DNA from: Auanema rhodensis
Taxonomy: Eukaryota > Animalia > Nematoda
Assembly (NCBI GenBank): GCA_964057225.1
Contig: OZ059895.1
Span: 18,972,001 to 19,036,000, forward strand
Direction: 5' to 3'
Length of the DNA stretch: 64,000 nt
The stretch's first letter is position 1. Every line of letters starts with the position of its first letter. Positions 738 to 64,000 of this stretch are shown one piece after another. The notes under the pieces were generated by a model. That model made no database searches. It saw only the letters and a list, made by a program, of their open reading frames with translations, and was not told the DNA's origin. Made by a program: the position numbers and the translations under genes.

Positions 738-743
<6 letters not shown>

Positions 744-820
<77 letters not shown>
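744..820. repeat. (GA)n microsatellite
   Basis: Directly visible dinucleotide run. Confidence 0.95.
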
Positions 821-822
<2 letters not shown>

Positions 823-15249: not shown

Positions 15250-15454
15250 GGGAGAAGAGAGAGAGAGAGAAAGGGAGAGAGGGAGGGGAAAGAGAGAGAG
15301 GGGGGGGAGAGAGAGGGGGACAGAGAGAGAGGGGGGAAAGATAGAGAGAGAGGAAGAAGTGAGGGAGAGAGAGAAAAAAAAGGGTGGACAACGTAAAAGA
15401 AATGAAGTTAACAGGAAGGAGCGTATGTCTCTGTGATGTATAAGAGAAAGAGAA

Positions 15455-15492
<38 letters not shown>

Positions 15493-15493
15493 T

Positions 15494-15538
<45 letters not shown>
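15250..15538. repeat. GA-rich low-complexity tract with (GA)n microsatellite
   Basis: Directly visible; explains the ERER/SLSL ORFs in the track. Confidence 0.9.
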
Positions 15539-18500: not shown

Positions 18501-18969
18501 AGAACGTCGTTAAGAAATTGATAAAATTCGAATAATTTAGCATCTGCTATCTATACGATATTTTCAGGATAAATGAATAGTTCGGGAAGACGATTGAATG
18601 ATGTAGATAGAACTATAAACTATAATACAGGAGAGAGGAAGGTAATAAGAGATGTCGAAGTAAAAAGTCTCGAAATAATTTAATAAATTTTCATTTGTTT
18701 ACAATAGCAGATAGAATAAAAAGACTTATGATCCTTACAATTCATCAAACGGAAATTGTTTTGGATGTTGATGATGATAGCCTGAATAAGTGTTTGTGTT
18801 TCGGTAATGTTCAAAAGGCAATTATTCCAAAAGAACAAAGAAAGAAAAGAAAAGATATAGGAAAAACAGAATAAGCAGTTACTAAGAAACTTTAAGAGAG
18901 CTCTGGGAAGTAAATCATCAGAGAGAGTAGAGAAAAAAAGAGTGAGCACAAAAGATACAGTAGGAAAAA

Positions 18970-19058
18970 GAAAGAGAGACAGAGAGAGAGAGAGAGGGGG
19001 GGGGAGTGAGAGAAGAAGAGAGAGAAAGAGAAAGAAAAAGAAAGAGGAAGGGAGAGAG

Positions 19059-19090
<32 letters not shown>
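18970..19090. repeat. GA-rich tract with (GA)n microsatellite
   Basis: Directly visible. Confidence 0.9.
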
Positions 19091-44404: not shown

Positions 44405-47400
44405 TTTTTTGTGAACAAATCTTCTGGATGGGCTCGATATAAACCTTTTTTCCGGAATAAGGAGAAGTCCTAGCCAAATCTCACTAGGAATTTCAGATTC
44501 TACCCATCTGAATACCCAACCTCAGATTATTTTTATTTGATTTTAGTTGATGATCTTAGAGAAAAAGGGACATTCACCGGGCACAACGTGAATAGAGCCT
44601 GAACTTTTTGTGAACAAATCTTCTGGATGGGCTCGATATAAACCTTTTTTCCGGAATAAGGAGAAGTCCTAGCCAAATCTCACTAGGAATTTCAGATTCT
44701 ACACATCTGAATACCCAACCTCAGATTATTTTTATTTGATTTTAGTTGATGATCTTAGAGAAAAAGGGACATTCACCGGGCACAACGTGAATAGAGCCTG
44801 AACTTTTTTGTGAACAAATCTTCTGGATGGGCACGATATAACCTTTTTTCCGGAATAAGGAGAAGTCCTAGTCAAATCTCACTAGGAAATTCAGATTCTA
44901 CACATCTGAATACCCAACCTCAGATTATTTTTATTTGATTTTAGTTGATGATCTTAGAGAAAAAAGGACATTCACCAGGCACAACGTGAATAGAGCCTGA
45001 ACTTTTTTGTGAACAAATCTTAAAGATGGGCACGATATAAACCTTTTTTCCGGAATAAGGAGAAGTCCTAGTCAAATCTCACTAGGAAATTCAGATTCTA
45101 CACATCTGAATACCCAACCTCAGATTATTTTTATTTGATTTTAGTTGATGATCTTAGAGAAAAAAGGACATTCACCAGGCACAACGTGAATAGAGCCTGA
45201 ACTTTTTTGTGAACAAATCTTAAAGATGGGCACGATATAAACCTTTTTTCCGGAATAAGGAGAAGTCCTAGTCAAATCTCACTAGGAAATTCAGATTCTA
45301 CACATCTGAATACCCAACCTCAGATTATTTTTATTTGATTTTAGTTGATGATCTTAGAGAAAAAAGGACATTCACCAGGCACAACGTGAATAGAGCCTGA
45401 ACTTTTTTGTGAACAAATCTTAAAGATGGGCACGATATAAACCTTTTTTCCGGAATAAGGAGAAGTCCTAGTCAAATCTCACTAGGAAATTCAGATTCTA
45501 CACATCTGAATACCCAACCTCAGATTATTTTTATTTGATTTTAGTTGATGATTTTTGAGAAAAAGGGACATTCACCAGGCACAACGTGAATAGAGCCTGA
45601 ACTTTTTGTGAACAAATCTTATGGATGGGCACGATATAAACCTTTTTTCCGGAATAAGGAGGAGTCCTCGCCAATTCTCACTAGGAAATTCAGATGCTAC
45701 ACATCTGAATACCCAACCTCAGATTATTTTTATTTGATTTTAGTAGATGATTTACGAGAAAAAAGGACATTCACCAGGCACAACTTGAATAGAGCCTGAA
45801 CTTTTTTGTGAACAAATCTTCTGGATGGGCACGATATAAACCTTTTTTCCGGAATAAGGAGAAGTCCTAGTCAAATCTCACTAGGAAATTCAGATTCTAC
45901 ACATCTGAATACCCAACCTCAGATTATTTTTATTCATTTTAGTTGATGATTTACGAGAAAAAAGGACATTCACCGGGCACAACGTGAATAGAGCCTGAAC
46001 TTTTTTGTGAACAAATCTTAAAGATGGGCACGATATAAACCTTTTTTCCGGAATAAGGAGGAGTCCTCGCCAATTCTCACTAGGAAATTCAGATTCTACA
46101 CATCTGAATACCCAACCTCAGCTTATTTTTATTTGATTTTAGTTGATGATTTACGAGAAAAAAGGACATTCACCGGGCACAACGTGAATAGAGCCTGAAC
46201 TTTTTTGTGAACAAATCTTAAAGATGGGCACGATATAAACCTTTTTTCCGGAATAAGGAGAAGTCCTAGTCAAATCTCACTAGGAAATTCAAATTCTGCA
46301 CATCTGAATACCCAACCTCAGATTATTTTTATTTGATTTTAGTTGATGATTTTTGAGAAAAAGGGACATTCACCAGGCACAACGTGAATAGAGCCTGAAC
46401 TTTTTTGTGAACAAATCTTAAAGATGGGCACGATATAAACCTTTTTTCCGGAATAAGGAGAAGTCCTAGTCAAATCTCACTAGGAAATTCAGATTCTACA
46501 CATCTGAATACCCAACCTCAGATTATTTTTATTTGATTTTAGTTGATGATTTTTGAGAAAAAGGGACATTCACCAGGCACAACGTGAATAGAGCCTGAAC
46601 TTTTTTGTGAACAAATCTTAAAGATGGGCACGATATAAACCTTTTTTCCGGAATAAGGAGAAGTCCTAGTCAAATCTCACTAGGAAATTCAGATTCTACA
46701 CATCTGAATACCCAACCTCAGATTATTTTTATTTGATTTTAGTTGATGATTTTTGAGAAAAAGGGACATTCACCAGGCACAACGTGAATAGAGCCTGAAC
46801 TTTTTTGTGAACAAATCTTAAAGATGGGCACGATATAAACCTTTTTTCCGGAATAAGGAGAAGTCCTAGTCAAATCTCACTAGGAAATTCAGATTCTACA
46901 CATCTGAATACCCAACCTCAGATTATTTTTATTTGATTTTAGTTGATGATTTTTGAGAAAAAGGGACATTCACCAGGCACAACGTGAATAGAGCCTGAAC
47001 TTTTTTGTGAACAAATCTTAAAGATGGGCACGATATAAACCTTTTTTCCGGAATAAGGAGAAGTCCTAGCCAAATCTCACTAGGAATTTCAGATTCTACA
47101 CATCTGAATACCCAACCTCAGATTATTTTTATTTGATTTTAGTTGATGATTTTTGAGAAAAAGGGACATTCACCAGGCACAACGTGAATAGAGCCTGAAC
47201 TTTTTTGTGAACAAATCTTAAAGATGGGCACGATATAAACCTTTTTTCCGGAATAAGGAGAAGTCCTAGTCAAATCTCACTAGGAAATTCAGATTCTGCA
47301 CATCTGAATACCCAACCTCAGATTATTTTTATTTGATTTTAGTTGATGATTTACGAGAAAAAAGGACATTCACCAGGCACAACGTGAATAGAGCCTGAAC

Positions 47401-50400
47401 TTTTTTGTGAACAAATCTTAAAGATGGGCACGATATAAACCTTTTTTCCGGAATAAGGAGAAGTCCTAGCCAAATCTCACTAGGAATTTCAGATTCTACA
47501 CATCTGAATACCCAACCTCAGATTATTTTTATTTGATTTTAGTTGATGATCTTAGAGAAAAAAGGACATTCACCGGGCACAACGTGATTAGAGCCTGAAC
47601 TTTTTTGTGAACAAATCTTCTGGATGGGCACGATATAAACCTTTTTTCCGGAATAAGGAGAAGTCCTAGTCAAATCTCACTAGGAAATTCAGATTCTACA
47701 CATCTGAATACCCAACCTCAGATTATTTTTATTTGATTTTAGTTGATGATTTTTGAGAAAAAGGGACATTCACCAGGCACAACGTGAATAGAGCCTGAAC
47801 TTTTTTGTGAACAAATCTTAAAGATGGGCACGATATAAACCTTTTTTCCGGAATAAGGAGAAGTCCTAGTCAAATCTCACTAGGAAATTCAGATTCTACA
47901 CATCTGAATACCCAACCTCAGATTATTTTTATTTGATTTTAGTTGATGATTTTTGAGAAAAAGGGACATTCACCAGGCACAACGTGAATAGAGCCTGAAC
48001 TTTTTTGTGAACAAATCTTCTGGATGGGCTCGATATAAACCTCTTTTCCTGAATAAGGAGACGTTCTAGCCAAATCTCACTAAGAAATTCAGATTCTACA
48101 CATCTGAATAACCAACCTCAGATTATTTTTATTTGATTTTAGTTGATGATTTTTGAGAAAAAGGGACATTCACCAGGCACAACGTGAATAGAGCCTGAAC
48201 TTTTTTGTGAACAAATCTTAAAGATGGGCACGATATAAACCTTTTTTCCGGAATAAGGAGAAGTCCTAGTCAAATCTCACTAGGAAATTCAGATTCTACA
48301 CATCTGAATACCCAACCTCAGATTATTTTTATTTGATTTTAGTTGATGATTTTTGAGAAAAAGGGACATTCACCAGGCACAACGTGAATAGAGCCTGAAC
48401 TTTTTTGTGAACAAATCTTCTGGATGGGCTCGATATAAACCTCTTTTCCTGAATAAGGAGACGTTCTAGCCAAATCTCACTAAGAAATTCAGATTCTACA
48501 CATCTGAATAACCAACCTCAGATTATTTTTATTTGATTTTAGTTGATGATTTACGAGAAAAAAGGACATTCACCAGGCACAACGTGAATAGAGCCTGAAC
48601 TTTTTTGTGAACAAATCTTAAAGATGGGCACGATATAAACCTTTTTTCCGGAATAAGGAGAAGTCCTAGCCAAATCTCACTAGGAATTTCAGATTCTACA
48701 CATCTGAATACCCAACCTCAGATTATTTTTATTTGATTTTAGTTGATGATCTTAGAGAAAAAAGGACATTCACCGGGCACAACGTGATTAGAGCCTGAAC
48801 TTTTTTGTGAACAAATCTTCTGGATGGGCACGATATAAACCTTTTTTCCGGAATAAGGAGAAGTCCTAGTCAAATCTCACTAGGAAATTCAGATTCTACA
48901 CATCTGAATACCCAACCTCAGATTATTTTTATTTGATTTTAGTTGATGATTTACGAGAAAAAAGGACATTCACCAGGCACAACGTGAATAGAGCCTGAAC
49001 TTTTTTGTGAACAAATCTTAAAGATGGGCACGATATAAACCTTTTTTCCGGAATAAGGAGAAGTCCTAGCCAAATCTCACTAGGAATTTCAGATTCTACA
49101 CATCTGAATACCCAACCTCAGATTATTTTCATTTGATTTTAGTTGATGATCTTAGAGAAAAAAGGACATTCACCGGGCACAACGTGATTAGAGCCTGAAC
49201 TTTTTTGTGAACAAATCTTCTGGATGGGCACGATATAAACCTTTTTTCCGGAATAAGGAGAAGTCCTAGTCAAATCTCACTAGGAAATTCAGATTGTACA
49301 CATCTGAATACCCAACCTCAGATTATTTTTATTTGATTTTAGTTGATGATTTTTGAGAAAAAGGGACATTCACCAGGCACAACGTGAATAGAGCCTGAAC
49401 TTTTTTGTGAACAAATCTTAAAGATGGGCACGATATAAACCTTTTTTCCGGAATAAGGAGAAGTCCTAGTCAAATCTCACTAGGAAATTCAGATTCTACA
49501 CATCTGAATACCCAACCTCAGATTATTTTTATTTGATTTTAGTTGATGATTTACGAGAAAAAAGGACATTCACCAGGCACAACGTGAATAGAGCCTGAAC
49601 TTTTTTGTGAACAAATCTTAAAGATGGGCACGATATAAACCTTTTTTCCGGAATAAGGAGAAGTCCTAGCCAAATCTCACTAGGAATTTCAGATTCTACA
49701 CATCTGAATACCCAACCTCAGATTATTTTTATTTGATTTTAGTTGATGATCTTAGAGAAAAAAGGACATTCACCGGGCACAACGTGATTAGAGCCTGAAC
49801 TTTTTTGTGAACAAATCTTCTGGATGGGCACGATATAAACCTTTTTTCCGGAATAAGGAGAAGTCCTAGTCAAATCTCACTAGGAAATTCAGATTCTACA
49901 CATCTGAATACCCAACCTCAGATTATTTTTATTTGATTTTAGTTGATGATTTACGAGAAAAAAGGACATTCACCAGGCACAACGTGAATAGAGCCTGAAC
50001 TTTTTTGTGAACAAATCTTAAAGATGGGCACGATATAAACCTTTTTTCCGGAATAAGGAGAAGTCCTAGCCAAATCTCACTAGGAATTTCAGATTCTACA
50101 CATCTGAATACCCAACCTCAGATTATTTTCATTTGATTTTAGTTGATGATCTTAGAGAAAAAAGGACATTCACCGGGCACAACGTGATTAGAGCCTGAAC
50201 TTTTTTGTGAACAAATCTTCTGGATGGGCACGATATAAACCTTTTTTCCGGAATAAGGAGAAGTCCTAGTCAAATCTCACTAGGAAATTCAGATTCTACA
50301 CATCTGAATACCCAACCTCAGATTATTTTTATTTGATTTTAGTTGATGATTTTTGAGAAAAAGGGACATTCACCAGGCACAACGTGAATAGAGCCTGAAC

Positions 50401-50518
50401 TTTTTTGTGAACAAATCTTCTGGATGGGCTCGATATAAACCTCTTTTCCTGAATAAGGAGACGTTCTAGCCAAATCTCACTAAGAAATTCAGATTCTACA
50501 CATCTGAATAACCAACCT
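44405..50518 (+). repeat. 200-bp tandem satellite, about 30.5 monomers
   Basis: Monomer GAACTTTTTTGTGAACAAATC...GTGAATAGAGCCT recurs every 199-200 bp. Confidence 0.98.
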
Positions 50519-50536
50519 AAGCAAAATGGAAAAATT

Positions 50537-50881
50537 GAAGAATCGAGGAGAAGCTGAGGAAGAACGGAAGGGTCCACGAGGAAACGAAGAGCCTTGGAAG
50601 AACCGAAGTGCCGAGGTGAAGCTGAGGAAGAACGGAAGAGTCCAGGAGGAACCGAAGAGGCCAGGAAGAATCGAAGAGTGCAGGAGAAAGCGACGAGCAG
50701 AGGAAGAGCCGTAGAGCCGAGGAGGAACCGAAGAGTCCAGGAAAAACCGAAGAGCCCAGGAGAGAGCGACAAGCAGAGGAAGAGCCGAAGAGCCGAGGAG
50801 GAACTGAAGAGTCCAGGAGAAACCGAAGAGCCGAGGAAGAACCGAAGAGTCTAGGATAAACCGAAGAAGCAGAGGAAGAAC
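50537..50881 (+). repeat. Purine-rich scrambled repeat (words GAACCGAAGAG, TCCAGGA, GCCGAGGA), part left of the Maverick
   Basis: Short modules in irregular order; the pattern resumes right after the element. Confidence 0.9.
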
Positions 50882-51141
50882 AGTAGTATACAAAAGGTTG
50901 ACGCTGGCGCACCTTTTTTGCAGATTTTCAACATTTTAAAAACATTTTTTCATCGAAAATCGTACTTAATTTCCCCAAAATGTGTCATTTTTGAAAAATG
51001 ACCAAAATTTGTCTGGCGCACCACTTGAGGACCTTTTTAATTTTAAGTTAACGTCACCACATAGAGCTCAATAAAAGACAAACGGAGAGCACGAAATAAA
51101 TGGATATCGCAAACTACTTAAATATTTTTACACGGCATAAT

Positions 51142-52085
51142 TCAATTGGAATCGGTGGAAGACGTACTATCAGAAGAGGTTGGACAGATGTTCTCAACGA
51201 TGTTTTGAAGAGTTTGCTTGATGTGATCCAGCGCAGAGGATTCGTCAGCGTTCGCCGCCGGACCTATAAAACAAAATAAATACATGTCTGTAATCAAAAT
51301 ATTAAAATGTACAAAGATTTAAAAACTCTATGTAAAATAATATAAAAATACCGAGGTAAGCGAGATCAGCGAGGACGGAAGCGCAATTGCTGAGGTTGCG
51401 GAGTCGATTGAAGAGCAGCTTGAACGACGACATCTTAACAAATTAACATTTAAATATTAAATGGTTATGTATACTCTTGCATTAAGTGTTGTAATTTATC
51501 ATTAAAACAATCGAAAGAAATCATACCTCATTGACGTCAGGCTGGAGAAGAGCTGGAGCAAGATGTCCACGCACTGAAAGAAACTTTGAAAAAATAATTC
51601 TAAAAAGCCTATGAATTTCTCCAATAGCAATATTGTTTACAAAATGTTAAGAGCAAGAAAAAGAAAAGTTTATCCTAACCGGAACGACGCCGCAAGTCAG
51701 TCGTGATTCCTTCAATTGCATTGTAGAGGACCTGGCGGACGACATTACCAGAGTTTGAATCCCACTCCTCCAGCCTAAATGGGTAAACGCTTTATGAGTT
51801 ATATTAAAAGGCAAATGAAGATATAAAATCAATTATCAAAAGCTGATAACTGAATGTTTTTTGAAAAATAGAAATATGCACTCACTTGTCACGGACAACA
51901 CTCACGACTCGATTAAGCAAATGTTGGATAGCGAGAGCTTGATCCTAAAATCATATTTTCAATATAAATACAGTCAAAAAATTTTGTAAGCTCCGTTAAA
52001 GCAATTTACATTCTTTTCCCGCTCAAATTCACTGAATAAATACATCCAAAACTTCAAACAATAATAGGTCAACTTACTGAAACAT
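51142..52085 (-). CDS. Intron-containing cargo gene inside the Maverick; unknown helical 144-aa protein
   Basis: Exons 52085-52078, 52031-52010, 51944-51886, 51774-51680, 51573-51527, 51433-51352, 51263-51142. All are GT-AG and phase-consistent: MFHEFEREKNDQALAIQHLLNRVVSVVRDKLEEWDSNSGNVVRQVLYNAIEGITTDLRRRSVRGHLAPALLQPDVNEMSSFKLLFNRLRNLSNCASVLADLAYLGPAANADESSALDHIKQTLQNIVENICPTSSDSTSSTDSN*. Exons are GC-richer than introns. The start codon is the least certain part. Confidence 0.78.
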
Positions 52086-52325
52086 ATCGACGAGCCATCA
52101 TATGTCTACTAGCCTTCTACGTGCGATATGTAAAAATAGTCAAACAGTTCGATATTAAATTACGAACTCCAGAATTAATAAAATCTCTCGAAATAGTCAT
52201 AGGAAAAGGAAAATTCATAGTTGGAAGTCTCTCGGCTTCCTCTGCGTCTCTGCTCACGCGTCACTCTCATCACCCTTCCACTCTGGACCAACCTCAGGTA
52301 AGGTAGCCATGTTTGGGGTTCATGG

Positions 52326-52475
52326 CTAGGTGGAAGTGAATTCACTTTCTAGTGAACACATCCATTTTCTACGAACTTCATCTCTTTTCATTTTCTTATT
52401 TCCTCCGGGTCTTGCAGATCCTGTTGAATTTAAAGAAAGATTTTGGAAACTATCTTCTTGAGTAATTTCTTTCAT
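52326..52475 (-). CDS. 49-aa internally deleted inverted copy of ORF 53021-53311
   Basis: MKEITQEDSFQNLSLNSTGSARPGGNKKMKRDEVRRKWMCSLESEFTST*; the first 25 aa are identical to the + strand ORF. Confidence 0.5.
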   Translation of the reverse strand: MKEITQEDSFQNLSLNSTGSARPGGNKKMKRDEVRRKWMCSLESEFTST

Positions 52476-53095
52476 TTATAAATAAATTACTTTTTCAATA
52501 ATGCCTTCCATAATCATAGAATCGAAGACCTTTGGAAATCATAGATCCTCCGGATTGATAGAAATTTATGATCCCAAGAAAAGGAATGAAATTGTACAAT
52601 CATTCTTGAATCTATGATTTCCAAAGGTCTTCGAGGGGCTGGTATCGTTTCGCCAGCGGGAGTGCTCTATCCCAAATCCGGGGGGTCTGGTGGGGTATCC
52701 CCCCCAGATAGAGAGAGCTTCAACAAAATTTTAAAGTATTAAAAGTATCAGAGAGAGCACTCCCACTCGCAGAGATGAGACTCTTTATTTTCAGGTAAAA
52801 AACGCATGCGCTCTAATGTTAACTCTTAGGGGGGGGGGGTGGGCGAAACGATACCAGCCCCTCGAAGACCTTTGGAAATCATAGATTCAAGAATGATTGT
52901 ACAATTTCATTCCTTTTCTTGGGATCATAGATTTCTATCAATCCGGAGGATCTATGATTTCCAAAGGTCTTCGATTCTATGATTGCGGAAGGCATTTTTG
53001 AAAAAATAATTTATTTATAAATGAAAGAAATTACTCAAGAAGATAGTTTCCAAAATCTTTCTTTAAATTCAACAGGATCTGCAAGACCCGGAGGA
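52401..53095. repeat. Internal inverted repeat of the Maverick: 254-bp arms, 187-bp spacer, nested hairpins
   Basis: 52401-52654 is the near-perfect reverse complement of 52842-53095. Confidence 0.95.
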
Positions 53096-53311
53096 TCTGT
53101 AAGACATTCACCTGGTGAAGGTAGTGAAGGATTCGAAGAAGATTTAAAGAAAATGAAAAGAGATGAAGTTCGTAGAAAAGTTGCAATGATTGGAAGTGAA
53201 TTGAGAAAATACATTCTTAAATCCAAAGAAATCCAAACTATGAGAAAACAAGAAATGGTTGATTTCATTATGAAGTTTAGAGACATTACTTTCGCTGAGT
53301 GTGAAGTTTAG
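53021..53311 (+). CDS. Small intronless Maverick ORF with a Rho_N/HeH-like nucleic-acid-binding motif
   Basis: LKKMKRDEVRRKVAMIG...IQTMRKQEMVDFI resembles the Rho N-terminal helix-extension-helix pattern; TAAATG start context. Confidence 0.55.
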   Translation: MKEITQEDSFQNLSLNSTGSARPGGSVRHSPGEGSEGFEEDLKKMKRDEVRRKVAMIGSELRKYILKSKEIQTMRKQEMVDFIMKFRDITFAECEV

Positions 53312-53396
53312 ATTTTTCTTGAAAAAAATTTTTCTATATAAAAAGGAAGTGTTGGATCCTTCTAAGGTTTGAAAAAGTAATTATTTTTGAGAAATA

Positions 53397-53912
53397 ATGG
53401 ATCATTTCAATTCAATGTCAAGAGATGATCTTCGTAAAGAAATCATTAAACTTCTTGATATAATGTCTGGAGGTGTAAAAAGTAAAAGAATCCTCAGTGA
53501 TTATCCGGAAGATCACTTACTTCATAGCACAGAGAATAAGAAAGTTGTCGGAAAATTCAAAGATGAATTGAATGGAAATATTATAACTGAAATAGTTGCT
53601 CTAAAGCCTAAACAATATGCTTTTAAGACTCTAGATGGTGGTGAAACTAAGAAAAGTAAAGGTGTTAAAAAGAATGTTGTCAAGAATGAGTTGACTGTCG
53701 ATGATTATAAGCACAGCCTTTTTAATAAAACTGTTGTAAGAAAGACTCAATATAGTATTAGGAGTGTTAAACACACTATTATCACACAATGTCAGAATAA
53801 AGTAGCTCTCAAAAATGATGAAGTTTCTACAGAACATAAACGTTATATTATTAAAGATAGTCACTCGACAATGGCATTTGGAAATGTCAATATTAAACCG
53901 AATCTTTTATAA
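53397..53912 (+). pseudogene. Truncated, chimeric protein-primed DNA polymerase B (pPolB) C-terminal fragment
   Basis: SDYPEDHLLHSTENKKVVGKFKDE, IVALKPKQYAF, KKSKGVKK, IRSVKH..QNKVAL, KRYI..TMAFG are typical of the Polinton pPolB C-terminus. The catalytic DTDS motif and the exonuclease domain are absent. Confidence 0.88.
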
Positions 53913-54308
53913 AAGAAATAAAACTGCACTTCCGAAGTCTTCTGAAGTCAAGTCAAAAAAGTAACCACAATGATGGGTTCCGAATTTTTGAAATTGAAAT
54001 GTTGAAAGTTCTATTTTTCTATCTTTTCTATCTTTAAGATATTTTATGATTTCTTCTAGTGGATTCAATCCAAAAGAATCAAAATAATAAATATTTTGTT
54101 TATTCTTGGAGTAGCAAACCCAATGAGTTCTTTTATTATTAGAAGAGTCTAGATTGACAATACCTACTTCTTTTTCTTTAATTCCTTCACTCGGCAATTT
54201 GTCTCTCATAAAGATTCCCCGGAAGTTCTTAATCTTTAATAATTCTACTAATTCAATGAGATCATAATTTGTCAGAGGTTTAAGATTTTTGTCGAATCTC
54301 AGATTCAT
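53907..54308 (-). CDS. Adenovirus-type (adenain-like) cysteine protease of Maverick/Polinton
   Basis: FRGIFMRDKLP, GIVNLDSS..THWVCY, YYFDSFG, Q.Q....HCGYF, with His-Asp-Gln-Cys in catalytic order. The region after CGYF may be shortened. Confidence 0.9.
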   Translation of the reverse strand: MNLRFDKNLKPLTNYDLIELVELLKIKNFRGIFMRDKLPSEGIKEKEVGIVNLDSSNNKRTHWVCYSKNKQNIYYFDSFGLNPLEEIIKYLKDRKDRKIELSTFQFQKFGTHHCGYFFDLTSEDFGSAVLFLL

Positions 54309-54529
54309 CACTTAATAGCAGTAAAAACAATAAATACAAATGAAAAATTGAAAGTGGGCAAAATGGGTAAGTGGTGCGCCAGACAAATTTTGGTCATTTT
54401 TCAAAAATGACACATTTTGGGGAAATTAAGTATGATTTTCAATGTAAAAATCTTTTTAAAATGTTGAAAATCTGCAAAATCGCATTTGCGCAAAAAAGGT
54501 GCGCCAGCGTCAACCTTTTGTATACTACT

Positions 54530-55865
54530 AAGAACCGAAGAGTCCAGGAGGAACCGAAGAGCCGAGGAAGAACCGAAGAGTCCAGGAATCACCGAAGAGC
54601 CGAGGAAGAACCGAAGAGTCCAGGATAAACCCAAGAGCCGAGGAAGAACCGAAGAGTCCAGTAGGAACCGAAGCGCTAAGGGAGAGCCGAAAGGTTCAGG
54701 AACAACCAAAGAGCCGTAGAAGAGTCGAGGAAGAACCGAAGAGTCCAGGAGGAACCGAAGAGTCCTGGAAAAACCGAAGAGTCCAGGAGGAACCGAAGAG
54801 TCAGGAGAAACCGAAGAGCCGAGGAAGAAGAGAAGAGTCAGGAGAAACCGAAGAGCCGAGGAAGAAGAGAAGAGTCCAGGAATCACCGAAGAGCCGAGGA
54901 ACCGAAGAGTCCAGGAGGAACCGAAGAGTCCAGGATAAACCGAAGAGCCGAGGAAGAACCGAATAGTTCAGGATAAATACAAGAGCCGATGAAGAACCGA
55001 AGAGTCCAGGAGAAACCAAAGAGCCGAGGAAGAACCGAAGAGCCGAGGAGAAACCGAAGAGTGCAGGAGAAAGCGACGAGCAGAGGAAGAGCCGTAGAGC
55101 CGAGGAGGAACCGAAGAGTCCAGGAAAAACCGAAGAGCCCAGGAAGAATCGAAGAGTCCAGGAGAAACCGAAGATGCAGAGGAAGAGCCGAAGAGCCGAT
55201 GAAGAACCGAAGAGTCCAGGAGAAACCAAAGAGCCGAGGAGGAACCGAAGAGTCCAGGAAAACCCGAAGAGTCCAGGAGAGAGCGACAAGCAGAGGAAGA
55301 GCCGAAGATCCGAGGAGGAACCGAAGAGTCCAGGAAAAACCGAAGAGCCCAGGAAGAATCGAAGAGTCCAGGAGAAACCGAAGATGCAGAGGAAGAGCCG
55401 AAGAGCCGAGGAAGAACCGAAGAGCCGAGGAAGAACCGGAAGAACCGAAGAGTCCAGTAGGAACCGAAGAGCCGAAGAGCCGAAGAGCCGAGGAAGAACC
55501 GAAGAGTCCAGGAGAAAGCGACAAGCAGAGGAAGAGCCGAAGAGCCGAGGAAGAACCGAAGAGTCCAGGATAAACCGAAGAACCGAGGAAGAACCGAAGA
55601 GTCCAGTAGGAACCGAAGAGCCGAGGAAGAAGCGAAGAGTCCAGGATAAACCCAAGAGCGAAAAGGTTCAGGAACAACCAAAGAGCCGTAGAAGAGTCGA
55701 GGAAGAACCGAAGAGTCCAGGAGGAACCGAAAAGACGAGAAACAAGAAGAAGAACCGAAGAGTCCAGGAGGAACCGAATGGTCCAGGAACAACCAAAGAT
55801 CCGAAGAGTCGAAGAAGATCTGCGGAGGAACTGAAAGAGTCCAGGAGAGGCCCAAGAAGTCCGAA
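54530..55865 (+). repeat. Purine-rich scrambled repeat, left block
   Basis: Irregular concatenation of AACCGAAGAG / TCCAGGA / CCGAGGA modules; more degenerate near 55670-55865. Confidence 0.92.
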
Positions 55866-56157
55866 AAATATGATCCTTTGTCCAGAAAGCTTATAGTTCA
55901 GGATATCCGTAGTTCCGAGTTCTGTAAATTTCAAGACTACGAATATATCATGTTTTTTTTAATTCCATACCATGTTTTTTCCCCAGTACTTCGAAGTTTG
56001 AAAAGCGCAGGAGCTGTTGACCGTAATGCCAGCTGTTGCAGTCTTCCTTCTGCAGAACTATCATATAGAAGTTATTTTTTCAGTTGATCTTATGGAATTT
56101 CTGAGAATAAGCTTATAAATGAAAGCTTCAAGTTAAATAATAAATTACCTTGCTCAT
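55668..56157 (-). CDS. Putative 3-exon ORF (about 113 aa) whose last exon runs into the scrambled repeat
   Basis: Exons 56157-56149 (MSK), 56049-55971 (KEDCNSWHYGQQLLRFSNFEVLGKKH) and 55921-55668 (ELGTTDILNYKLSGQRIIFFGLLGP...). Junctions are GT-AG and phase-consistent; TATATAA and TTTCAG lie upstream. No recognisable homology. Confidence 0.4.
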
Positions 56158-57110
56158 TCTGTTGTTTTTCCGCGAGTACGGCAGAGCTGACACAGGACTG
56201 CAGTCTGAAGAGCTCAGAAGCTGTCGACCTATTCGGACGGCGACAGTCGGAGAAATGATTGTCAACTGAAAAAAATTTGCTTATATACCCTTTGACGGAC
56301 AGACCACGTAAACCACGTTTACGTAAGATTTTGAAAATTTCAAAAACAAAAACCGGCTGTACACGATTTGAAAATTACAAGAAATGAAAGAAAATTATGT
56401 AAAATAAATGTTTTAATTCAGATTTTAATCAATTATATTATATTTTTAAAATTATTATATTGTTTTATACTTTTTTATACTGTTTAAAAATATAAAATAA
56501 TTTTATATAATAAATATTGTTAACTGAATAATTGTTTTTCATTTATTTTAAACTGGAAATCATTAATAAACATTTGAATAATTTGAAACATATAAAGATT
56601 AAGATAATTAATTATAATTTAATGATAGAATCAACATAATAATTATTAACAAATGCCTAACCCACTCCTCCTTTATTCTAATTTAGCGCGCTTGTGTGAA
56701 TTTGTTTAATAAATTTTATGCTTAAAAAGTTCTTTAATGATAATGTTTTTGAAAGAAACTATAGGCAGTGCATACGATTAAGCCTAGAATTGTACTTGAC
56801 AGTACTAAATAATTTCTGATATGTTAGACTTACACCCCCCCCCCCCCCCCTTCTTTAATTTTATACATTTGAATCACTCGCACAATCGCTTCTTTTCACA
56901 TAGAAATTTATAGTAAAATTTATATAAATATTGAAATAAAATTGAAAAAGTATTTGTATTTGAATTTTTAATATGATAAATGAATTTTATACATTTGAAT
57001 CCAAGTTATGATGTTTATCAGTGGAGCGCGACTTATCGAGTATTGTATTTTTTCTAGTATAATTTCACTAAAACGTATAATTAGCTGAAATAAATCAAGT
57101 AGTACGGAAC
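55972..57110. repeat. Left arm of the large inverted repeat
   Basis: Near-identical reverse complement of 58337-60098 once the extra tandem units are removed. Confidence 0.95.
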
Positions 57111-57417
57111 TTGTAAATATATAATCGAACCTGTAGAACCAGAAAAACTGACAGAAATTTGAAAATATCGTCATTTCAACAAGATATGACACCTTGAACA
57201 TAGTTCTTCTTAGTGAACCTTTATTGCCTTATGGTTTATATGATATAACGATTTTTTATTTTGTCATATAGTTACCTTTTATATGAAAATGTGGTCAATA
57301 GCCGAAAGGATAAGATGACAGACTGGCACTCCAACGGTCCAAGATCGAATCCCACAGGATACGGATCAGAGCATAAGGTAAGACAAAGATTACAGAGGCG
57401 GCAACGGAACCCGAGGT

Positions 57418-57563
57418 CCAGGAACCCGAAGGCCAGGAATCCGGAAGAAGAGGGCCAGGAACCCGAAGGCCAGGAATCCGGAAGAAGAGGGCCAGGAACC
57501 CGAAGGCCAGGAATCCGGAAGAAGAGGGCCAGGAACCCGAAGGCCAGGAATCCGGAAGAAGAG
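57418..57563 (+). repeat. 37-bp minisatellite, 4 copies
   Basis: CCAGGAACCCGAAGGCCAGGAATCCGGAAGAAGAGGG. Confidence 0.92.
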
Positions 57564-58312
57564 GACCAGAAGCCGAGGAGGACCAGAAGACGCGAGGATC
57601 AGAAGCCGAGGAGGACCAGAAGACGCGAGGATCAGAAGCCGAGGAGGACCAGAAGACGCGAGGATCAGAAGCCGAGGAGGACCAGAAGACGCGAGGATCA
57701 GAAGCCGAGGAGGACCAGAAGACGCGAGGATCAGAAGCCGAGGAGGACCAGAAGACGCGAGGATCAGAAGCCGAGGAGGACCAGAAGACGCGAGGATCAG
57801 AAGCCGAGGAGGACCAGAAGACGCGAGGATCAGAAGCCGAGGAGGACCAGAAGACGGGAGGATCAGAAGCCGAGGAGGACCAGAAGACGGGAGAATCAGA
57901 AGCCGAGGAGGACCAGAAGACGGGAGAATCAGAAGACGCGAGAATCAGAAGCCGAGGAGGACCAGAAGACGCGAGAATCAGAAGCCGAGGAGGACCAGAA
58001 GACGGGAGAATCAGAAGCCGAGGAGGACCAGAAGACGGGAGAATCAGAAGCCGAGGAGGACCAGAAGACGGGAGAATCAGAAGCCGAGGAGGACCAGAAG
58101 ACGGGAGAATCAGAAGCCGAGGAGGACCAGAAGACGGGAGAATCAGAAGCCGAGGAGGACCAGAAGACGGGAGAATCAGAAGCCGAGGAGGACCAGAAGA
58201 CGCGAGGATCAGAAGCCGAGGAGGACCAGAAGACGCGAGGATCAGAAGCCGAGGAGGACCAGAAGACGCGAGGATCAGAAGCCGAGGAGGACCAGAAGAC
58301 GCGAGGATCAGA
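57564..58312 (+). repeat. 33-bp minisatellite (17+16 sub-repeats), about 23 copies
   Basis: GACCAGAAGACGCGAGGATCAGAAGCCGAGGAG, with a block of GGGAGAATC variants. Confidence 0.95.
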
Positions 58313-58336
58313 GGTTTTTCAAGTTTACTATATTTG

Positions 58337-60098
58337 GTTCCGTAATACTTGATTTATTTCAGCTAATTATACGTTTTAGTGAAATTATACTAGAAAAAAT
58401 ACAATACTCGATAAGTCGCGCTCCACTGATAAACATCATAACTTGGATTCAAATGTATAAAATTCATTTATCATATTAAAAATTCAAATACAAATACTTT
58501 TTCAATTTTATTTCAATATTTATATAAATTTTACTATAAATTTCTATGTGAAAAGAAGCGATTGTGCGAGTGATTCAAATGTATAAAATTAAAGAAGGGG
58601 GGGGGGGTGTAAGTCTAACATATCAGAAATTATTTAGTACTGTCAAGTACAATTCTAGGCTTAATCGTATGCACTGCCTATAGTTTCTTTCAAAAACATT
58701 ATCATTAAAGAACTTTTTAAGCATAAAATTTATTAAACAAATTCACACAAGCGCGCTAAATTAGAATAAAGGAGGAGTGGGTTAGGCATTTGTTAATAAT
58801 TATTATGTTGATTCTATCATTAAATTATAATTAATTATCTTAATCTTTATATGTTTCAAATTATTCAAATGTTTATTAATGATTTCCAGTTTAAAATAAA
58901 TGAAAAACAATTATTCAGTTAACAATATTTATTATATAAAATTATTTTATATTTTTAAACAGTATAAAAAAGTATAAAACAATATAATAATTTTAAAAAT
59001 ATAATATAATTGATTAAAATCTGAATTAAAACATTTATTTTACATAATTTTCTTTCATTTCTCGTAATTTTCAAATCGTGTACAGCCGGTTTTTGTTTTT
59101 GAAATTTTCAAAATCTTACGTAAACGTGGTTTACGTGGTCTGTCCGTCAAAGGGTATATAAGCAAATTTTTTTCAGTTGACAATCATTTCTCCGACTGTC
59201 GCCGTCCGAATAGGTCGACAGCTTCTGAGCTCTTCAGACTGCAGTCCTGTGTCAGCTCTGAAGTACTCGCGGAAAAACAAAAGAATGAGCAAGGTAATTT
59301 ATTATTTAACTTGAAGCTTTCATTTATAAGCTTATTCTCAGAAATTCCATAAGAACAACTGAAAAAAATAACTTCTATATGATAGTTCTGCAGAAGGAAG
59401 ACTGGAACAACTGGCATTACGGTCAACAGCTCCTGCGCTTTTCAAACTTCGAAGTCCTTTGACAGCTCTGCCGTACTCGCGGAAAAACAACAGAATGAGC
59501 AAGGTAATTTATTATTTAACTTGATGCTTTCATTTATAAGCTTATTCTCAGAAATTCCATAAGATCAACTGAAAAAATAACTTCTATATGATAGTTCTGC
59601 AGAAGGAAGACTGGAACAACTGGCATTACGGTCAACAGTTCCTGCGCTTTTCAAACTTCGAAGTCCTTTGACAGCTCTGCCGTACTCGCGGAAAAACAAA
59701 AGAATGAGCAAGGTAATTTATTATTTAACTTGAAGCTTTCATTTATAAGCTTATTCTCAGAAATTCCATAAGATCAACTGAAAAAATAACTTCTATATGA
59801 TAGTTCTGCAGAAGGAAGACTGCAACAACTGGCATTACGGTCAACAGCTCCTGCGCTTTTCAAACTTCGAAGTCCTTTGACAGCTCTGCCGTACTAGCGG
59901 AAAAACAACAGAATGAGCAAGGTAATTTATTATTTAACTTGAAGCTTTCATTTATAAGCTTATTCTCAGAAATTCCATAAGATCAACTGAAAAAATAACT
60001 TCTATATGATAGTTCTGCAGAAGGAAGACTGCAACAGCTGGCATTACGGTCAACAGCTCCTGCTCTTTTCAAACTCCGAAGTACTGGGGGAAAAACAT
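58337..60098. repeat. Right arm of the large inverted repeat, including a 4x tandem expansion
   Basis: Reverse complement of 55972-57110. Confidence 0.95.
59253..60082 (+). repeat. About 209-bp tandem repeat, 4 copies, each containing an exon-intron-exon segment
   Basis: The CT(C/A)GCGGAAAAACAA anchor occurs at 59266, 59476, 59685 and 59894; the left arm has a single copy. Confidence 0.93.
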
Positions 60099-62129
60099 TG
60101 TTCCTGGACCTTTCGGCTCTCCCTTAGCGCTTCGGTTCCTACTGGACTCTTCGGTTCTTCATCGGTTCTTGTATTTATCCTGGACTCTTCGGTTCTTCCT
60201 CCGCTCTTCGGTTTATCCTGGACTCTTCGGTTTATCCTGGACTCTTCGGTTCCTCCTGGACTCTTCGGTGATTCCTGGACTCTTCGGTTCTTCCTCGGCT
60301 CTTCGGTTTATCCTGGACTCTTCGGTTCTTCATCGGCTCTTGTATTTATCCTGGAATCTTCGGTTCCTACTGGACTCTTCGGTTTTTCATCGGCTCTTGT
60401 ATTTATCCTCGGCTCTTCGGCTCTTCCTCTGCTTGTCGCTTTCTCCTGGACTCTTCGGTTTCTCCTCGGCTCTTCGGTTCTTCCTCGGCTCTTCGGTTTA
60501 TCCTGAACTCTTCGGTTCCTCCTGGACTCTTCGGCTCTTCGGTGATTCCTGGACTCTTCGCTTCTTCCTCGGCTCTTCGGTTTATCCTGAACTCTTCGGT
60601 TCCTCCTGGACTCTTCGGTTCCTCGGCTCTTCGGTTCTTCCTCGGCTCTTTGGTTTCTCCTGGACTCTTCGGTTCTTCATCGGCTCTTGTATTTATCCTG
60701 GACTCTTCGGTTCTTCCTCGGCTTGTCGCTTTCTCCTGGACTCTTCGGTTTCTCCTGGACTCTTCGGTTTCTCCTGGACTCTTCGGTTCCTCCTCGGCTC
60801 TTCGGTTCTTCCTCGGCTCTTCGGTTTATCCTGGACTCTTGGGTTCCTCCTGGACTCTTCGGTTTATCCTGGACTCTTCGGTTCCTCCTGGATTCTTCGG
60901 TTCCTCCTAGACTCTTCGCTTCTTCCTCGGCTCTTCGGTTCTTCCTCGGCTCTTTGGTTTCTCCTGGACTCTTCGGTTCTTCATCGGCTCTTGTATTTAT
61001 CCTGGACTCTTCGGTTCTCCTCGGCTTGTCGCTTTCTCCTGGACTCTTCGGTTTCTCCTGGACTCTTCGATTCTTCCTGGGCTCTTCGGTTTTTCCAGCA
61101 CTCTTCGGTTCCTCCTCGGCTCTTCGGTTCTTCCTCGGCTCTTCGGTTTATCCTGAACTCTTCGGTTCCTCCTGGACTCTTTGGTTTCTCCTGGACTCTT
61201 CGGTTTCTCCTGGACTCTTCGGTTCTTCATCGGCTCTTGTATTTATCCTGGACTCTTCGCTTCTTCCTCGGCTCTTCGGTTTCTCCTGACTCTTCGGTTC
61301 CTCCTGGACTCTTCGGTTCTTCCTGGCTCTTCGGCTCTTCGGTGATTCCTGGACTCTTCGCTTCTTCCTCGGCTCTTCGGTTTCTCCTGGACTCATCGGT
61401 TCCTCCTGGACTCTTCGGTTTCTCCTGGACTCTTCGGTTCTTCCTCGGCTCTACGGCTCTTCCTCTGCTCGTCGCTTTCTCCTGCACTCTTCGGTTCCTC
61501 CTGGACTCTTCGGTGATTCCTGGACTCTTCGGTTCTTCCTCGGCTCTTTGGTTTCTCCTGGACTTTTCGGTTCCTCCTCGGCTCTACGGCTCTTCCTCGG
61601 CTCTACGGCTCTTCCTCTGCTTGTCGCTCTCTCCTGTGCCTGGTGAATGTCCCTTTTTCTCAAAAATCATCAACTAAAATCAAATAAAAATAATCTGAGG
61701 TTGGGTATTCAGATGGGTAGAATCTGAAATTCCTATTTTTCCTGGACTCTTCGCTTCTTCCTCGGCTCTTCGGTTTCTCCTGACTCTTCGGTTCCTCCTG
61801 GACTCTTCGGTTCTTCCTGGCTCTTCGGCTCTTCGGTGATTCCTGGACTCTTCGCTTCTTCCTCGGCTCTTCGGTTTCTCCTGGACTCATCGGTTCCTCC
61901 TGGACTCTTCGGTTTCTCCTGGACTCTTCGGTTCTTCCTCGGCTCTACGGCTCTTCCTCTGCTCGTCGCTTTCTCCTGCACTCTTCGGTTCCTCCTGGAC
62001 TCTTCGGTGATTCCTGGACTCTTCGGTTCTTCCTCGGCTCTTTGGTTTCTCCTGGACTTTTCGGTTCCTCCTCGGCTCTACGGCTCTTCCTCGGCTCTAC
62101 GGCTCTTCCTCTGCTTGTCGCTCTCTCCT
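60098..62129 (-). repeat. Purine-rich scrambled repeat, right block (inverted orientation)
   Basis: CTCTTCGGTT / TCCTGGA / TCCTCGG modules are the reverse complement of the left block. Confidence 0.92.
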
Positions 62130-64000
62130 GTGCCTGGTGAATGTCCCTTTTTCTCAAAAATCATCAACTAAAATCAAATAAAAATAATCTGTGGTTGGGT
62201 ATTCAGATGTGTAGAATCTGAAATTCCTAGTGAGATTTGCCTAGGACTTCTCCTTATTCCGGAAAACAGGTTTATATCGTGCCCATCCATAAGATTTGTT
62301 CACAAAAAGTTCAGGCTCTATTCACGTTGTGCCTGGTGAATGTCCCTTTTTCTCAAAAATCATCAACTAAAATCAAATAAAAATAATCTGAGGTTGGGTA
62401 TTCAGATGGGTAGAATCTGAAATTCCTAGTGAGATTCGGATAGGACTTCTCTTTTTTCCGGAAAAGAGGTTTATATCGTGCCCATCCATAAGATTTGTTC
62501 ACAAAAAGTTCAGGCTCTATTCACGTTGTGTCTGGTGAATGTCCCTTTTTCTCAAAAATCATCAACTAAAATCAAATAAAAATAATCTGAGGTTGGGTAT
62601 TCAGATGGGTAGAATCTGAAATTCCTAGTGAGATTCGGATAGGACTTCTCTTTTTTCCGGAAAAGAGGTTTATATCGTGCCCATCCATAAGATTTGTTCA
62701 CAAAAAGTTCAGGCTCTATTCACGTTGTGCCTGGTGAATGTCCCTTTTTCTCAAAAATCATCAACTAAAATCAAATAAAAATAATCTGTGGTTGGGTATT
62801 CAGATGGGTAGAATCTGAAATTCCTAGTGAGATTCGGATAGGACTTCTCTTTTTTCCGGAAAAGAGGTTTATATCGTGCCCATCCATAAGATTTGTTCAC
62901 AAAAAGTTCAGGCTCTATTCACGTTGTGCCTGGTGAATGTCCCTTTTTCTCAAAAATCAATAACTAAAATCAAATAAAAATAATCTGTGGTTGGGTATTC
63001 AGATGTGTAGAATCTGAAATTCCTAGTGAGATTTGCCTAGGACTTCTCCTTATTCCGGAAAACAGGTTTATATCGTGCCCATCCATAAGATTTGTTCACA
63101 AAAAGTTCAGGCTCTATTCACGTTGTGCCTGGTGAATGTCCCTTTTTCTCAAAAATCATCAACTAAAATCAAATAAAAATAATCTGTGGTTTGGTATTCA
63201 GATGTGTAGAATCTGAAATTCCTAGTGAGATTTGCCTAGGACTTCTCCTTATTCCGGAAAACAGGTTTATATCGTGCCCATCCATAAGATTTGTTCACAA
63301 AAAGTTCAGGCTCTATTCACGTTGTGCCTGGTGAATGTCCCTTTTTCTTGAAAATCATCAACTAAAATCAAATAAAAATAATCTGAGGTTGGGTATTCAG
63401 ATGGGTAGAATCTGAAATTCCTAGTGAGATTCGGATAGGACTTCTCTTTTTTCCGGAAAAGAGGTTTATATCGTGCCCATCCATAAGATTTGTTCACAAA
63501 AAGTTCAGGCTCTATTCACGTTGTGCCTGGTGAATGTCCCTTTTTCTCAAAAATCATCAACTAAAATCAAATAAAAATAATCTGAGGTTGGGTATTCAGA
63601 TGGGTAGAATCTGAAATTCCTAGTGAGATTCGGATAGGACTTCTCTTTTTTCCGGAAAAGAGGTTTATATCGTGCCCATCCATAAGATTTGTTCACAAAA
63701 AGTTCAGGCTCTATTCACGTTGTGCCTGGTGAATGTCCCTTTTTCTCAAAAATCAATAACTAAAATCAAATAAAAATAATCTGTGGTTGGGTATTCAGAT
63801 GTGTAGAATCTGAAATTCCTAGTGAGATTCGGATAGGACTTCTCTTTTTTCCGGAAAAGAGGTTTATATCGTGCCCATCCATAAGATTTGTTCACAAAAA
63901 GTTCAGGCTCTATTCACGTTGTGCCTGGTGAATGTCCCTTTTTCTCAAAAATCAATAACTAAAATCAAATAAAAATAATCTGTGGTTTGGTATTCAGATG
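62129..64000 (-). repeat. 199-bp satellite in inverted orientation, more than 9 monomers, running off the window
   Basis: Reverse complement of the 44405-50518 monomer. An extra ~98-bp fragment lies at 61635-61734. Confidence 0.97.

What the first reader, a model, noticed from the sequence alone, without database searches (positions are those of the whole stretch)
50876..54535. 3.6-kb mini-Maverick acting as a gene-cargo vehicle
Seen: AGTAGT/ACTACT termini, ~150-bp TIRs, an exact 6-bp TSD (AAGAAC), protease and pPolB remnants, and a spliced host-like gene filling the left third. Known: Mavericks/Polintons are typically 15-20 kb with 6-bp TSDs and AG termini, and nematode Mavericks have been reported to capture cargo genes and move them horizontally, including a toxin-antidote element. 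Inference: this is a satellite-type derivative that lost integrase, ATPase and capsid genes but kept the cis signals, so it could be mobilised in trans with its cargo. The clean TSD shows a true integrase-type insertion.
Basis: partly seen in the sequence, partly recalled or inferred. Interest (0 to 1): 0.9.

Follow-up and report, generated by a model that had tools for sequence, protein, structure and literature searches.

The report
Gutted Maverick transposon keeping cargo gene
This is a real but gutted copy of a Maverick (Polinton) virus-like transposon in a nematode-type genome: it keeps both ends, a spliced passenger gene and a few small genes, has lost everything needed to move by itself, and nothing here shows that the short form ever moved.

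Summary
Window 50882-54529 (3,648 bp) is bounded by inverted repeats of 145 and 161 nt (141 matches, 4 mismatches, one 16-nt indel). It has (AGT)2/(ACT)2 tips and identical 6-bp flanks, and it lies inside a 19-bp minisatellite whose periodicity does not explain those flanks.

Contents:
- A six-exon GT-AG gene of 142 codons beside the left repeat. This is the known cargo slot of nematode Mavericks.
- A conserved 96-codon ORF, plus a head-to-head partial duplicate of it.
- Only the last 12-17% of a protein-primed DNA polymerase B.
- An open adenain-like protease ORF that keeps its catalytic residues.

Integrase, ATPase, capsid and fusogen genes are absent.

It is therefore an internally deleted, non-autonomous Maverick, an already described condition. 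The claim that it works as a trans-mobilised gene-cargo vehicle is untested:
- The window holds one copy and no autonomous partner.
- A TSD records the original integration, not the size of what integrated.
- The cargo protein has no recognisable family in exon-by-exon searches; the joined-exon search was left out.

Verdict: new member of a known kind, moderate interest.

The parts
50544..50881 (.). Left part of the 19-bp minisatellite that was the insertion target (continues at 54530-55799)
   Evidence: Tandem Repeats Finder rows, period 19; repeat families D1-D3 span both flanks
50876..50881 (.). Left copy of the 6-bp target-site duplication
   Evidence: Identical to 54530-54535; a 6+6 tandem occurs at 1 of 3,547 positions in such arrays, and the phase is best restored with one copy kept
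50882..51026 (+). Left terminal inverted repeat, 145 nt, starting with the (AGT)2 end-motif; holds two copies of a 10-nt motif found only in the TIRs
   Evidence: Inverted repeats I2 and I3; blastn; alignment counts; motif positions
51142..52101 (-). Cargo gene: six exons (52101-52078, 51944-51886, 51774-51680, 51573-51527, 51433-51352, 51263-51142), 429 nt = 142 codons plus stop; five GT-AG introns of 88-133 nt; its 3' end faces the left TIR
   Evidence: Sequence read on the minus strand; phases, splice sites and absence of internal stops; exon GC 0.51 against intron GC 0.16-0.27
52102..52364 (-). Region upstream of the cargo gene (presumed 5' UTR/promoter; GC 0.42)
   Evidence: Position and composition only; inference
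52365..52654 (-). Left arm of the internal inverted duplication; contains a partial, inverted copy of the 96-codon ORF (ORF 52326-52475, minus strand)
   Evidence: I1 (254 nt, 98%) and I4 (33 nt, 100%); blastn; protein alignment A3; tblastn cluster 52365-52475
52655..52841 (.). Unique 187-bp centre of the inverted duplication, GC 0.48, with G and C runs
52842..53179 (+). Right arm of the internal inverted duplication (overlaps the start of the 96-codon ORF)
   Evidence: I1 and I4
53021..53311 (+). Complete 96-codon ORF, AT-rich and intronless: predicted disordered head plus one long helix. Conserved in Caenorhabditis japonica (93%, same length) and Heterorhabditis bacteriophora (63%). Probably a Maverick accessory gene
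53397..53912 (+). [quoted passage not shown] Only the last 12-17% of a protein of about 1,100-1,300 aa remains, in a single frame with no stops. It keeps the KxY motif region; the polymerase catalytic DTDS motif lies outside the retained part
   Evidence: 4,428 relatives, aligned at their extreme C-termini; tblastn outer bounds 53406-53906, one frame; invariant columns of relatives; PF03175 in 4 of 25 relatives, best 3.2e-27
53907..54311 (-). Adenain-like (Peptidase C5, clan CE) cysteine protease ORF, 134 codons, open. Keeps all 19 columns invariant in the 27-row alignment A1 (which includes the query itself), and also the near-invariant catalytic Cys column (His, Asp, Gln and Cys all present). 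One stretch departs from the family pattern
   Evidence: 153 homologues; alignment A1; profile hits adenain 1avp at 1.1e-5; 17 of 27 members match PF00770; model pLDDT 78, best fold match 1nln_A at E 1.1e-6, TM 0.69
54369..54529 (-). Right terminal inverted repeat, 161 nt, ending with the (ACT)2 motif
54530..54535 (.). Right copy of the 6-bp target-site duplication; the 19-bp minisatellite resumes here and runs to 55799

Best explanation
A Maverick/Polinton virus-like transposon integrated into a 19-bp minisatellite by a retroviral-type integrase reaction, which left the 6-bp duplication. The copy seen today keeps about one fifth of a typical element: both TIRs, the cargo slot next to the left TIR with an apparently intact six-exon passenger gene, a small conserved helical-protein ORF, the C-terminal tail of pPolB, and the protease ORF.

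Integrase, most of pPolB, the packaging ATPase, capsid proteins and the fusogen are gone, so it cannot replicate, integrate or form particles by itself.

My best reading is that the interior was lost at this locus after integration, through deletion and rearrangement, with the 815-bp head-to-head inverted duplication as a scar. On that reading the locus is a fossil whose only plausibly working part is the cargo gene, perhaps also the small ORFs.

Shown: the element's identity, its boundaries, its gene content and its lack of autonomy. Inferred: the timing of the loss and any expression.
For: - End structure: TIRs, (AGT)2/(ACT)2 motif and 6-bp TSD. These match the hallmarks listed for Mavericks in PMC8097293.
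- pPolB tail only.
- Adenain-like protease.
- No other Maverick-related coding anywhere in the 64 kb, and only four short unassigned stretches (57-263 nt) in the element, too small for an integrase gene.
- Position and orientation fit nematode Mavericks. The intron-bearing, GC-richer cargo lies next to the left TIR with its 3' end facing it, and the pPolB 3' end faces the other TIR.
- The same paper states that most nematode Mavericks are incomplete or pseudogenized. 96% of vertebrate Maverick loci are degraded.
- More than one internal junction plus an inverted duplication suggests a messy rearrangement rather than one clean deletion.
- The TIR arms differ by 4 of 145 positions plus an indel, so this is not a fresh insertion.
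- Single copy in the window.
Against: - All retained reading frames are still open: pPolB tail 171 codons, protease 134, small ORF 96, cargo 142. None of 5,000 shuffles of each of the three intronless AT-rich ORFs was stop-free; the cargo was not shuffled. This is a little tidy for a long-decaying fossil.
- The arms of the inverted duplication differ by 5 of 254 positions, about as much as the TIRs (4 of 145). The rearrangement is therefore not clearly younger than the insertion and could predate it.
- Nothing in one window can date the deletion relative to the integration.
Confidence: 0.55

Rival explanations
1. The short form is itself a propagating non-autonomous 'mini-Maverick'. On this reading the interior was lost before this integration, and the 3.6-kb unit, which keeps the TIRs, was inserted here by proteins supplied by an autonomous relative, carrying its cargo gene along.
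For: - Both termini are complete, with the family end-motif and paired internal 10-nt motifs.
- The TSD is clean.
- All retained ORFs are open.
- The inverted-duplication arms are about as diverged as the TIRs, so the rearrangement may be as old as the insertion.
- A 93%-identical copy of the 96-codon ORF exists in C. japonica, so related elements exist elsewhere.
Against: - No second copy of the element or of its TIRs in 64 kb, and no autonomous partner there.
- A TSD does not report the size of what was inserted.
- The closest protease and pPolB relatives in the protein databases are 90% and 69% identical, not near-identical siblings.
- The genome-wide census was not run.
Confidence: 0.3
2. 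A different TIR transposon, or a composite of unrelated repeats in satellite DNA, that merely contains captured Maverick fragments.
For: - The element lies in a satellite-rich, rearranged region.
- It contains an internal palindrome with nested hairpins.
Against: - The end-motif, 6-bp TSD and TIR length are those of Mavericks.
- The retained Maverick genes sit at the right end in the expected orientation, and the cargo at the left end.
- No transposase of another superfamily was found in the element's ORFs.
Confidence: 0.05
3. Assembly artefact: a collapsed or chimeric join of Maverick ends within repetitive DNA.
For: The surrounding sequence is highly repetitive, where assemblers often fail.
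Against: - The junctions are precise to the base.
- The TSD is exact and the minisatellite phase is restored across it.
- The interior is unique sequence within the window.
Confidence: 0.03

Closest known systems
Nematode Mavericks with cargo genes (Widen et al., bioRxiv 10.1101/2022.07.12.499685)
   Same: - TIR-bounded element with intronless, AT-rich core genes.
[quoted passage not shown]
- The cargo 3' end faces one TIR and the pPolB 3' end faces the other.
- Most copies are reported as incomplete or pseudogenized.
   Different: - Only 3.6 kb, against about 17 kb for the C. bovis example.
- Integrase, ATPase, capsid genes and fusogen are absent.
- The cargo is a 142-codon protein with no family match. 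Its exon pieces gave no Pfam match of any kind, protease or kinase domains included, so nothing links it to the WASP protease or KRMA kinase families described there.
Degraded Maverick 'genomic fossils' of vertebrates (PMC8097293)
   Same: Same end-motif, (AGT)2//(ACT)2, and perfect 6-bp TSD; loss of coding capacity is the rule (96% of loci).
   Different: - Those fossils are described as eroded by stops, frameshifts and insertions, many without TIRs.
- Here the loss is by large deletion, while the TIRs and every retained ORF are still clean.
Internally deleted non-autonomous DNA transposons (for example P-element deletion derivatives, PMC12393704; MITEs)
   Same: Ends kept, enzyme genes lost; in those families the short forms are moved by proteins of full-length relatives.
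   Different: - For this element no second copy is known, so family behaviour is not shown.
- Mavericks are thought to replicate with their own protein-primed polymerase rather than by cut-and-paste (own knowledge, Kapitonov and Jurka 2006). What a short form would need is therefore less clear.
Adenovirus protease, adenain (PDB 1avp/1nln; Pfam PF00770)
   Same: Same fold (TM 0.69 over the query) and catalytic residues in conserved columns.
   Different: 134 residues against 204; about 20% identity; the window protein itself does not reach any Pfam threshold.

Membership tests
Maverick/Polinton element | Terminal inverted repeats of a hundred to several hundred bp | tested here: met
   145 and 161 nt; 141 matches, 4 mismatches, one indel
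Maverick/Polinton element | 6-bp target-site duplication | tested here: met
   Identical 6-mers at 50876-81 and 54530-35; not explained by the satellite (1 of 3,547 positions); criterion from PMC8097293
Maverick/Polinton element | 5'-(AGT)2 // (ACT)2-3' or (AG)3//(CT)3 end-motif | tested here: met
   Read directly at 50882 and 54529; motif as reported in PMC8097293
Maverick/Polinton element | [quoted passage not shown] | tested here: not met
   Only the last 12-17% is present, without the catalytic DTDS motif region. The remnant proves descent, not function
Maverick/Polinton element | Encodes a retrovirus-like (rve) integrase (definition in PMC5499653) | tested here: not met
   No Pfam match in the ten ORF pieces scanned, which cover each assigned coding feature; the other short ORFs were not scanned; no unassigned stretch in the element exceeds 263 nt
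Maverick/Polinton element | Morphogenesis module: major and minor capsid proteins, FtsK-like ATPase, adenain-like protease | tested here: not met
   Only the protease is present; there is no room for the others and no matches to them
Nematode Maverick cargo slot | [quoted passage not shown] | tested here: met
   Six-exon gene at 51142-52101; exon GC 0.51 against 0.29-0.33 for the intronless ORFs; criterion
Peptidase C5 / clan CE (adenain-like) | Catalytic His, Asp/Glu and Cys, with the oxyanion Gln, in conserved columns | tested here: met
   H63, D78, Q108 and C115 fall in invariant or near-invariant columns of 27 sequences
Peptidase C5 / clan CE (adenain-like) | Adenain fold | tested here: met
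   Model pLDDT 78; top six PDB matches are adenovirus proteases, best E 1.1e-6, TM 0.69
Peptidase C5 / clan CE (adenain-like) | Pfam PF00770 gathering threshold reached by the protein itself | tested here: not met
   No hit at E<=1 for the window ORF. 17 of 27 aligned family members do match, and the family profile hits 1avp at 1.1e-5
Propagating non-autonomous (trans-mobilised) transposon family | Several copies with the same internal structure but different insertion sites and TSDs | not tested
   Within the window there is one copy only.
Propagating non-autonomous (trans-mobilised) transposon family | An autonomous partner sharing the TIRs | tested here: inconclusive
   None in the 64-kb window; the rest of the genome was not searched
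WASP protease / KRMA kinase cargo families of nematode Mavericks | Serine-protease or kinase domain | tested here: not met
   Exon pieces gave no Pfam match at E<=1 and no PDB match. The product has only 142 codons. Caveat: exon-by-exon searches are weak

The most novel reading that the evidence does not exclude
This copy belongs to a family of miniature Mavericks that keep only the termini, the cargo slot, a small helical-protein gene and the protease. Such a family would spread through proteins of full-length relatives, a satellite-like lifestyle that would let host-derived genes ride the Maverick route between genomes at low cost.
Probability: 0.15. Interest if true: 0.75.

Novelty: new member of a known kind. 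Interest (0 to 1): 0.4.

Why it matters
Mavericks are the one vector shown to move genes between distantly related nematodes. What is unknown is how small an element can be and still be carried along.

This locus is a clean example for study: base-exact ends and TSD, an apparently intact cargo gene, and no enzymes. It is a good anchor for a descriptive census of short Maverick derivatives.

By itself it is one more deleted copy of a kind already reported as the majority state of these elements. Its cargo gene is an unannotated, family-less 142-codon protein, which may interest people who catalogue Maverick-borne genes.

Tried and rejected
**Searches that gave nothing useful**
- Direct Pfam scan of ten ORF pieces of the element: nothing at E<=0.01.
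- phmmer of the protease and of the pPolB piece against PDB: nothing meaningful.
- Profile of full-length pPolB relatives against PDB: only zinc-finger hits. The polymerase assignment rests instead on PF03175 in 4 of 25 relatives and on conserved DTDS and KxY columns.
- Cargo, exon by exon: the exon-3 piece found no homologue. That tool only sees proteins of 0.55-1.75 times the query length, so a blank says little. Exons 3 and 6 against PDB gave none. All exons against the window and against all fetched proteins gave no paralogue.
- Rfam and tRNA scans of the region: none.
- Fold search of the 96-codon ORF: not run, because the model is a single long helix and any matches would be meaningless.

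**Readings considered and rejected**
- That the TSD is a by-product of the minisatellite.
- That the internal palindrome is a nested transposon insertion. Its outer flanks show no duplication, and its arms contain the true 5' part of a conserved gene.
- That the 96-codon ORF is a displaced piece of pPolB. The only likeness is non-significant, E 0.7-9.
Full report
**1. Observation**

The sequence at 50700-54700 shows an element from 50882 to 54529.
- It begins with two AGT triplets and ends with two ACT triplets.
- The repeat finder and a self-blast give terminal inverted repeats at 50882-51026 and 54369-54529.
- A global alignment of the two arms counts 141 matches, 4 mismatches and a single 16-nt indel.
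- The six bases on either side (50876-50881, 54530-54535) are identical.

The element sits inside a 19-bp minisatellite (50544-50881 and 54530-55799), so I asked whether that repeat alone could produce matching flanks. It cannot.
- An exact 6+6 tandem occurs at 1 of 3,547 positions in the three arrays of this repeat in the window.
- The 19-bp phase across the site is best restored when exactly one copy of the 6-mer is kept: 11/19 straddling matches, against 5/19 with both copies and 7/19 with none.

The target-site duplication is therefore real.

**2. Contents, right end**

The 134-codon ORF at 53907-54311 (minus strand):
- It has 153 database homologues, up to 90% identical. One is from the nematode Auanema and several carry PF00770.
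- In a 27-sequence alignment it keeps all 19 invariant columns. The catalytic His, Asp, Gln and Cys are all kept (His, Asp and Gln in invariant columns, Cys in a near-invariant one).
- 17 of the 27 members match Peptidase_C5, and the family profile hits adenain at 1.1e-5.
- An AlphaFold model (pLDDT 78) is closest to adenovirus proteases (1nln_A, E 1.1e-6, TM 0.69).
- The frame has no stops. One stretch departs from the family pattern.

The 171-codon ORF at 53397-53912 (plus strand):
- It has 4,428 relatives. Where these are full length (about 1,100-1,300 aa) it aligns to their extreme C-terminus.
- tblastn of 31 long relatives against the whole window finds one stretch only, 53406-53906. It is in one frame and corresponds to the last 12-17% of the protein.
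- The relatives share invariant DTDS and KxY columns, and 4 of 25 match PF03175 at up to 3.2e-27. They are protein-primed B-family polymerases.
- The retained piece lies beyond the DTDS motif. pPolB is therefore broken once, by a large deletion, with no stops or frameshifts in what is left.

**3. Contents, middle**

- A complete 96-codon ORF (53021-53311) is 93% identical and equal in length to a C. japonica protein. It is 63% identical to one from Heterorhabditis bacteriophora, a species reported to hold largely complete Mavericks.
- Its model is a disordered head plus one long helix. I take it for a Maverick accessory gene; its function is unknown.
- Its 5' part and upstream region are duplicated head to head. 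The arms are 52365-52654 and 52842-53179 (254 nt at 98% plus 33 nt at 100%), around a unique 187-bp centre.
- The inverted copy of the ORF is partial: one internal in-frame loss and one truncation.
- The outer edges of the palindrome carry no duplication, so this is a rearrangement and not a nested insertion.

**4. Contents, left end**

- On the minus strand a six-exon model runs from 52101 to 51142. It has 429 nt, all five introns are GT-AG and 88-133 nt long, four of the five acceptor contexts are T-rich, the phases are consistent, and the only stop is terminal.
- Exons have GC 0.51 and introns 0.16-0.27. The intronless ORFs to the right have GC 0.29-0.33.
- This matches the description of the cargo slot of nematode Mavericks: a region next to the left TIR with higher GC and intron-bearing genes. 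In the circular C. bovis element the 3' end of the cargo faces the TIR, as it does here.
- I searched the model exon by exon, by reference. Results: no Pfam family, no homologue of the exon-3 piece (with that tool's length limits), no PDB match for exons 3 and 6, and no paralogue in the window.
'Host-like' therefore rests on gene structure and composition, not on a known host relative.

**5. What is missing**

- No integrase, ATPase, capsid or fusogen. No unassigned stretch in the element exceeds 263 nt.
- Nothing else in the 64 kb resembles any fetched Maverick protein.
- By the definition that all Polintons encode pPolB and an rve integrase (PMC5499653), this is a derivative and not a working member.

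**6. Interpretation**

Identity as an internally deleted Maverick is secure. About 21% of a 17.4-kb reference length remains (element length).

Whether the short form ever moved is open.
- The TSD proves an integration here, not the size of what integrated.
- For decay in place:
  - Incomplete copies are the rule in this family.
  - The interior shows more than one junction plus a palindrome.
  - The TIRs have diverged.
  - The window holds one copy and no partner.
- For a propagating short form:
  - The ends are perfect.
  - All retained ORFs are open; none of 5,000 shuffles of the three intronless ORFs was stop-free.
  - The palindrome arms (5 of 254) are about as diverged as the TIRs (4 of 145).
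- My estimates: 0.55 decay in place, 0.30 propagating mini-element, the rest artefact or other.

**7. Host and surroundings**

- The window carries eukaryotic topoisomerase I exons and Maestro-like HEAT-repeat exons.
- The introns are short with T-rich acceptors, and the closest named relatives of the element's ORFs are from nematodes.
- The species was not determined. Because Mavericks transfer between nematodes, the C. japonica hit does not name the host.

**8. Steps left out, and disclosures**

This is why copy number is untested.
The consensus lines printed by the alignment tool were not used.
- the predicted cargo exons were concatenated in memory, only to compute GC.
- the two host flanks (not element sequence) were joined in memory, only to count 19-bp phase matches. 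Nothing from either step was printed, saved or searched.
- One search also printed the TIR-to-TIR alignment, which is non-coding.
- One search used a 10-nt motif copied from the output.

Noticed in passing
window 44405-64000: The element lies in a mosaic of satellites laid out as a large inverted arrangement. A 200-bp satellite (44405-50518, 30.6 copies) and the 19-bp minisatellite (50544-55799) reappear further on, judging from the reported consensus units apparently in reverse-complement orientation (19-bp array 60130-62110; 199-bp array 62129-64000). Between them lie a 33-bp array (57561-58312) and a 209-bp array (59213-60082).
   Followed up: partly
window 50904, 51013, 54373, 54498: A 10-nt GC-rich motif occurs twice in each TIR, near the outer and inner ends, and nowhere else in the 64 kb. 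It is a candidate protein-binding site of the termini.
   Followed up: partly
window 52522-52634 and 52862-52974: Each arm of the internal inverted duplication contains its own 113-nt hairpin (25-nt perfect stems, 63-nt loop). The unique centre (52655-52841) has long G and C runs. Origin unknown.
   Followed up: no
window 25964-27448 (+) and 30909-31548 (+): Host genes: exons of eukaryotic DNA topoisomerase I (Topoisom_I_N 2e-39; catalytic core 1.8e-17) and of a Maestro-like HEAT-repeat protein (9.2e-9).
   Followed up: partly
proteins P0132, P0135, P0145 and others (alignment A2): 22 of 25 full-length pPolB relatives carry an Endonuclease_7 (HNH-like) domain around residue 430-470, and several carry C2H2 zinc fingers. 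Pfam recognises the polymerase domain itself in only 4 of the 25.
   Followed up: no
window 53142-53179 vs 53404-53441: A 38-nt direct similarity (74%) links the middle of the 96-codon ORF to the head of the pPolB-remnant ORF. The 96-codon ORF also has weak, non-significant likeness (E 0.7-9) to pPolB relatives just upstream of the retained piece. This could be chance or a very old duplication.
   Followed up: partly
window 743-822, 15443-15538, 18969-19090: Three long AG dinucleotide microsatellites (40-62 copies) account for several spurious long ORFs.
   Followed up: no
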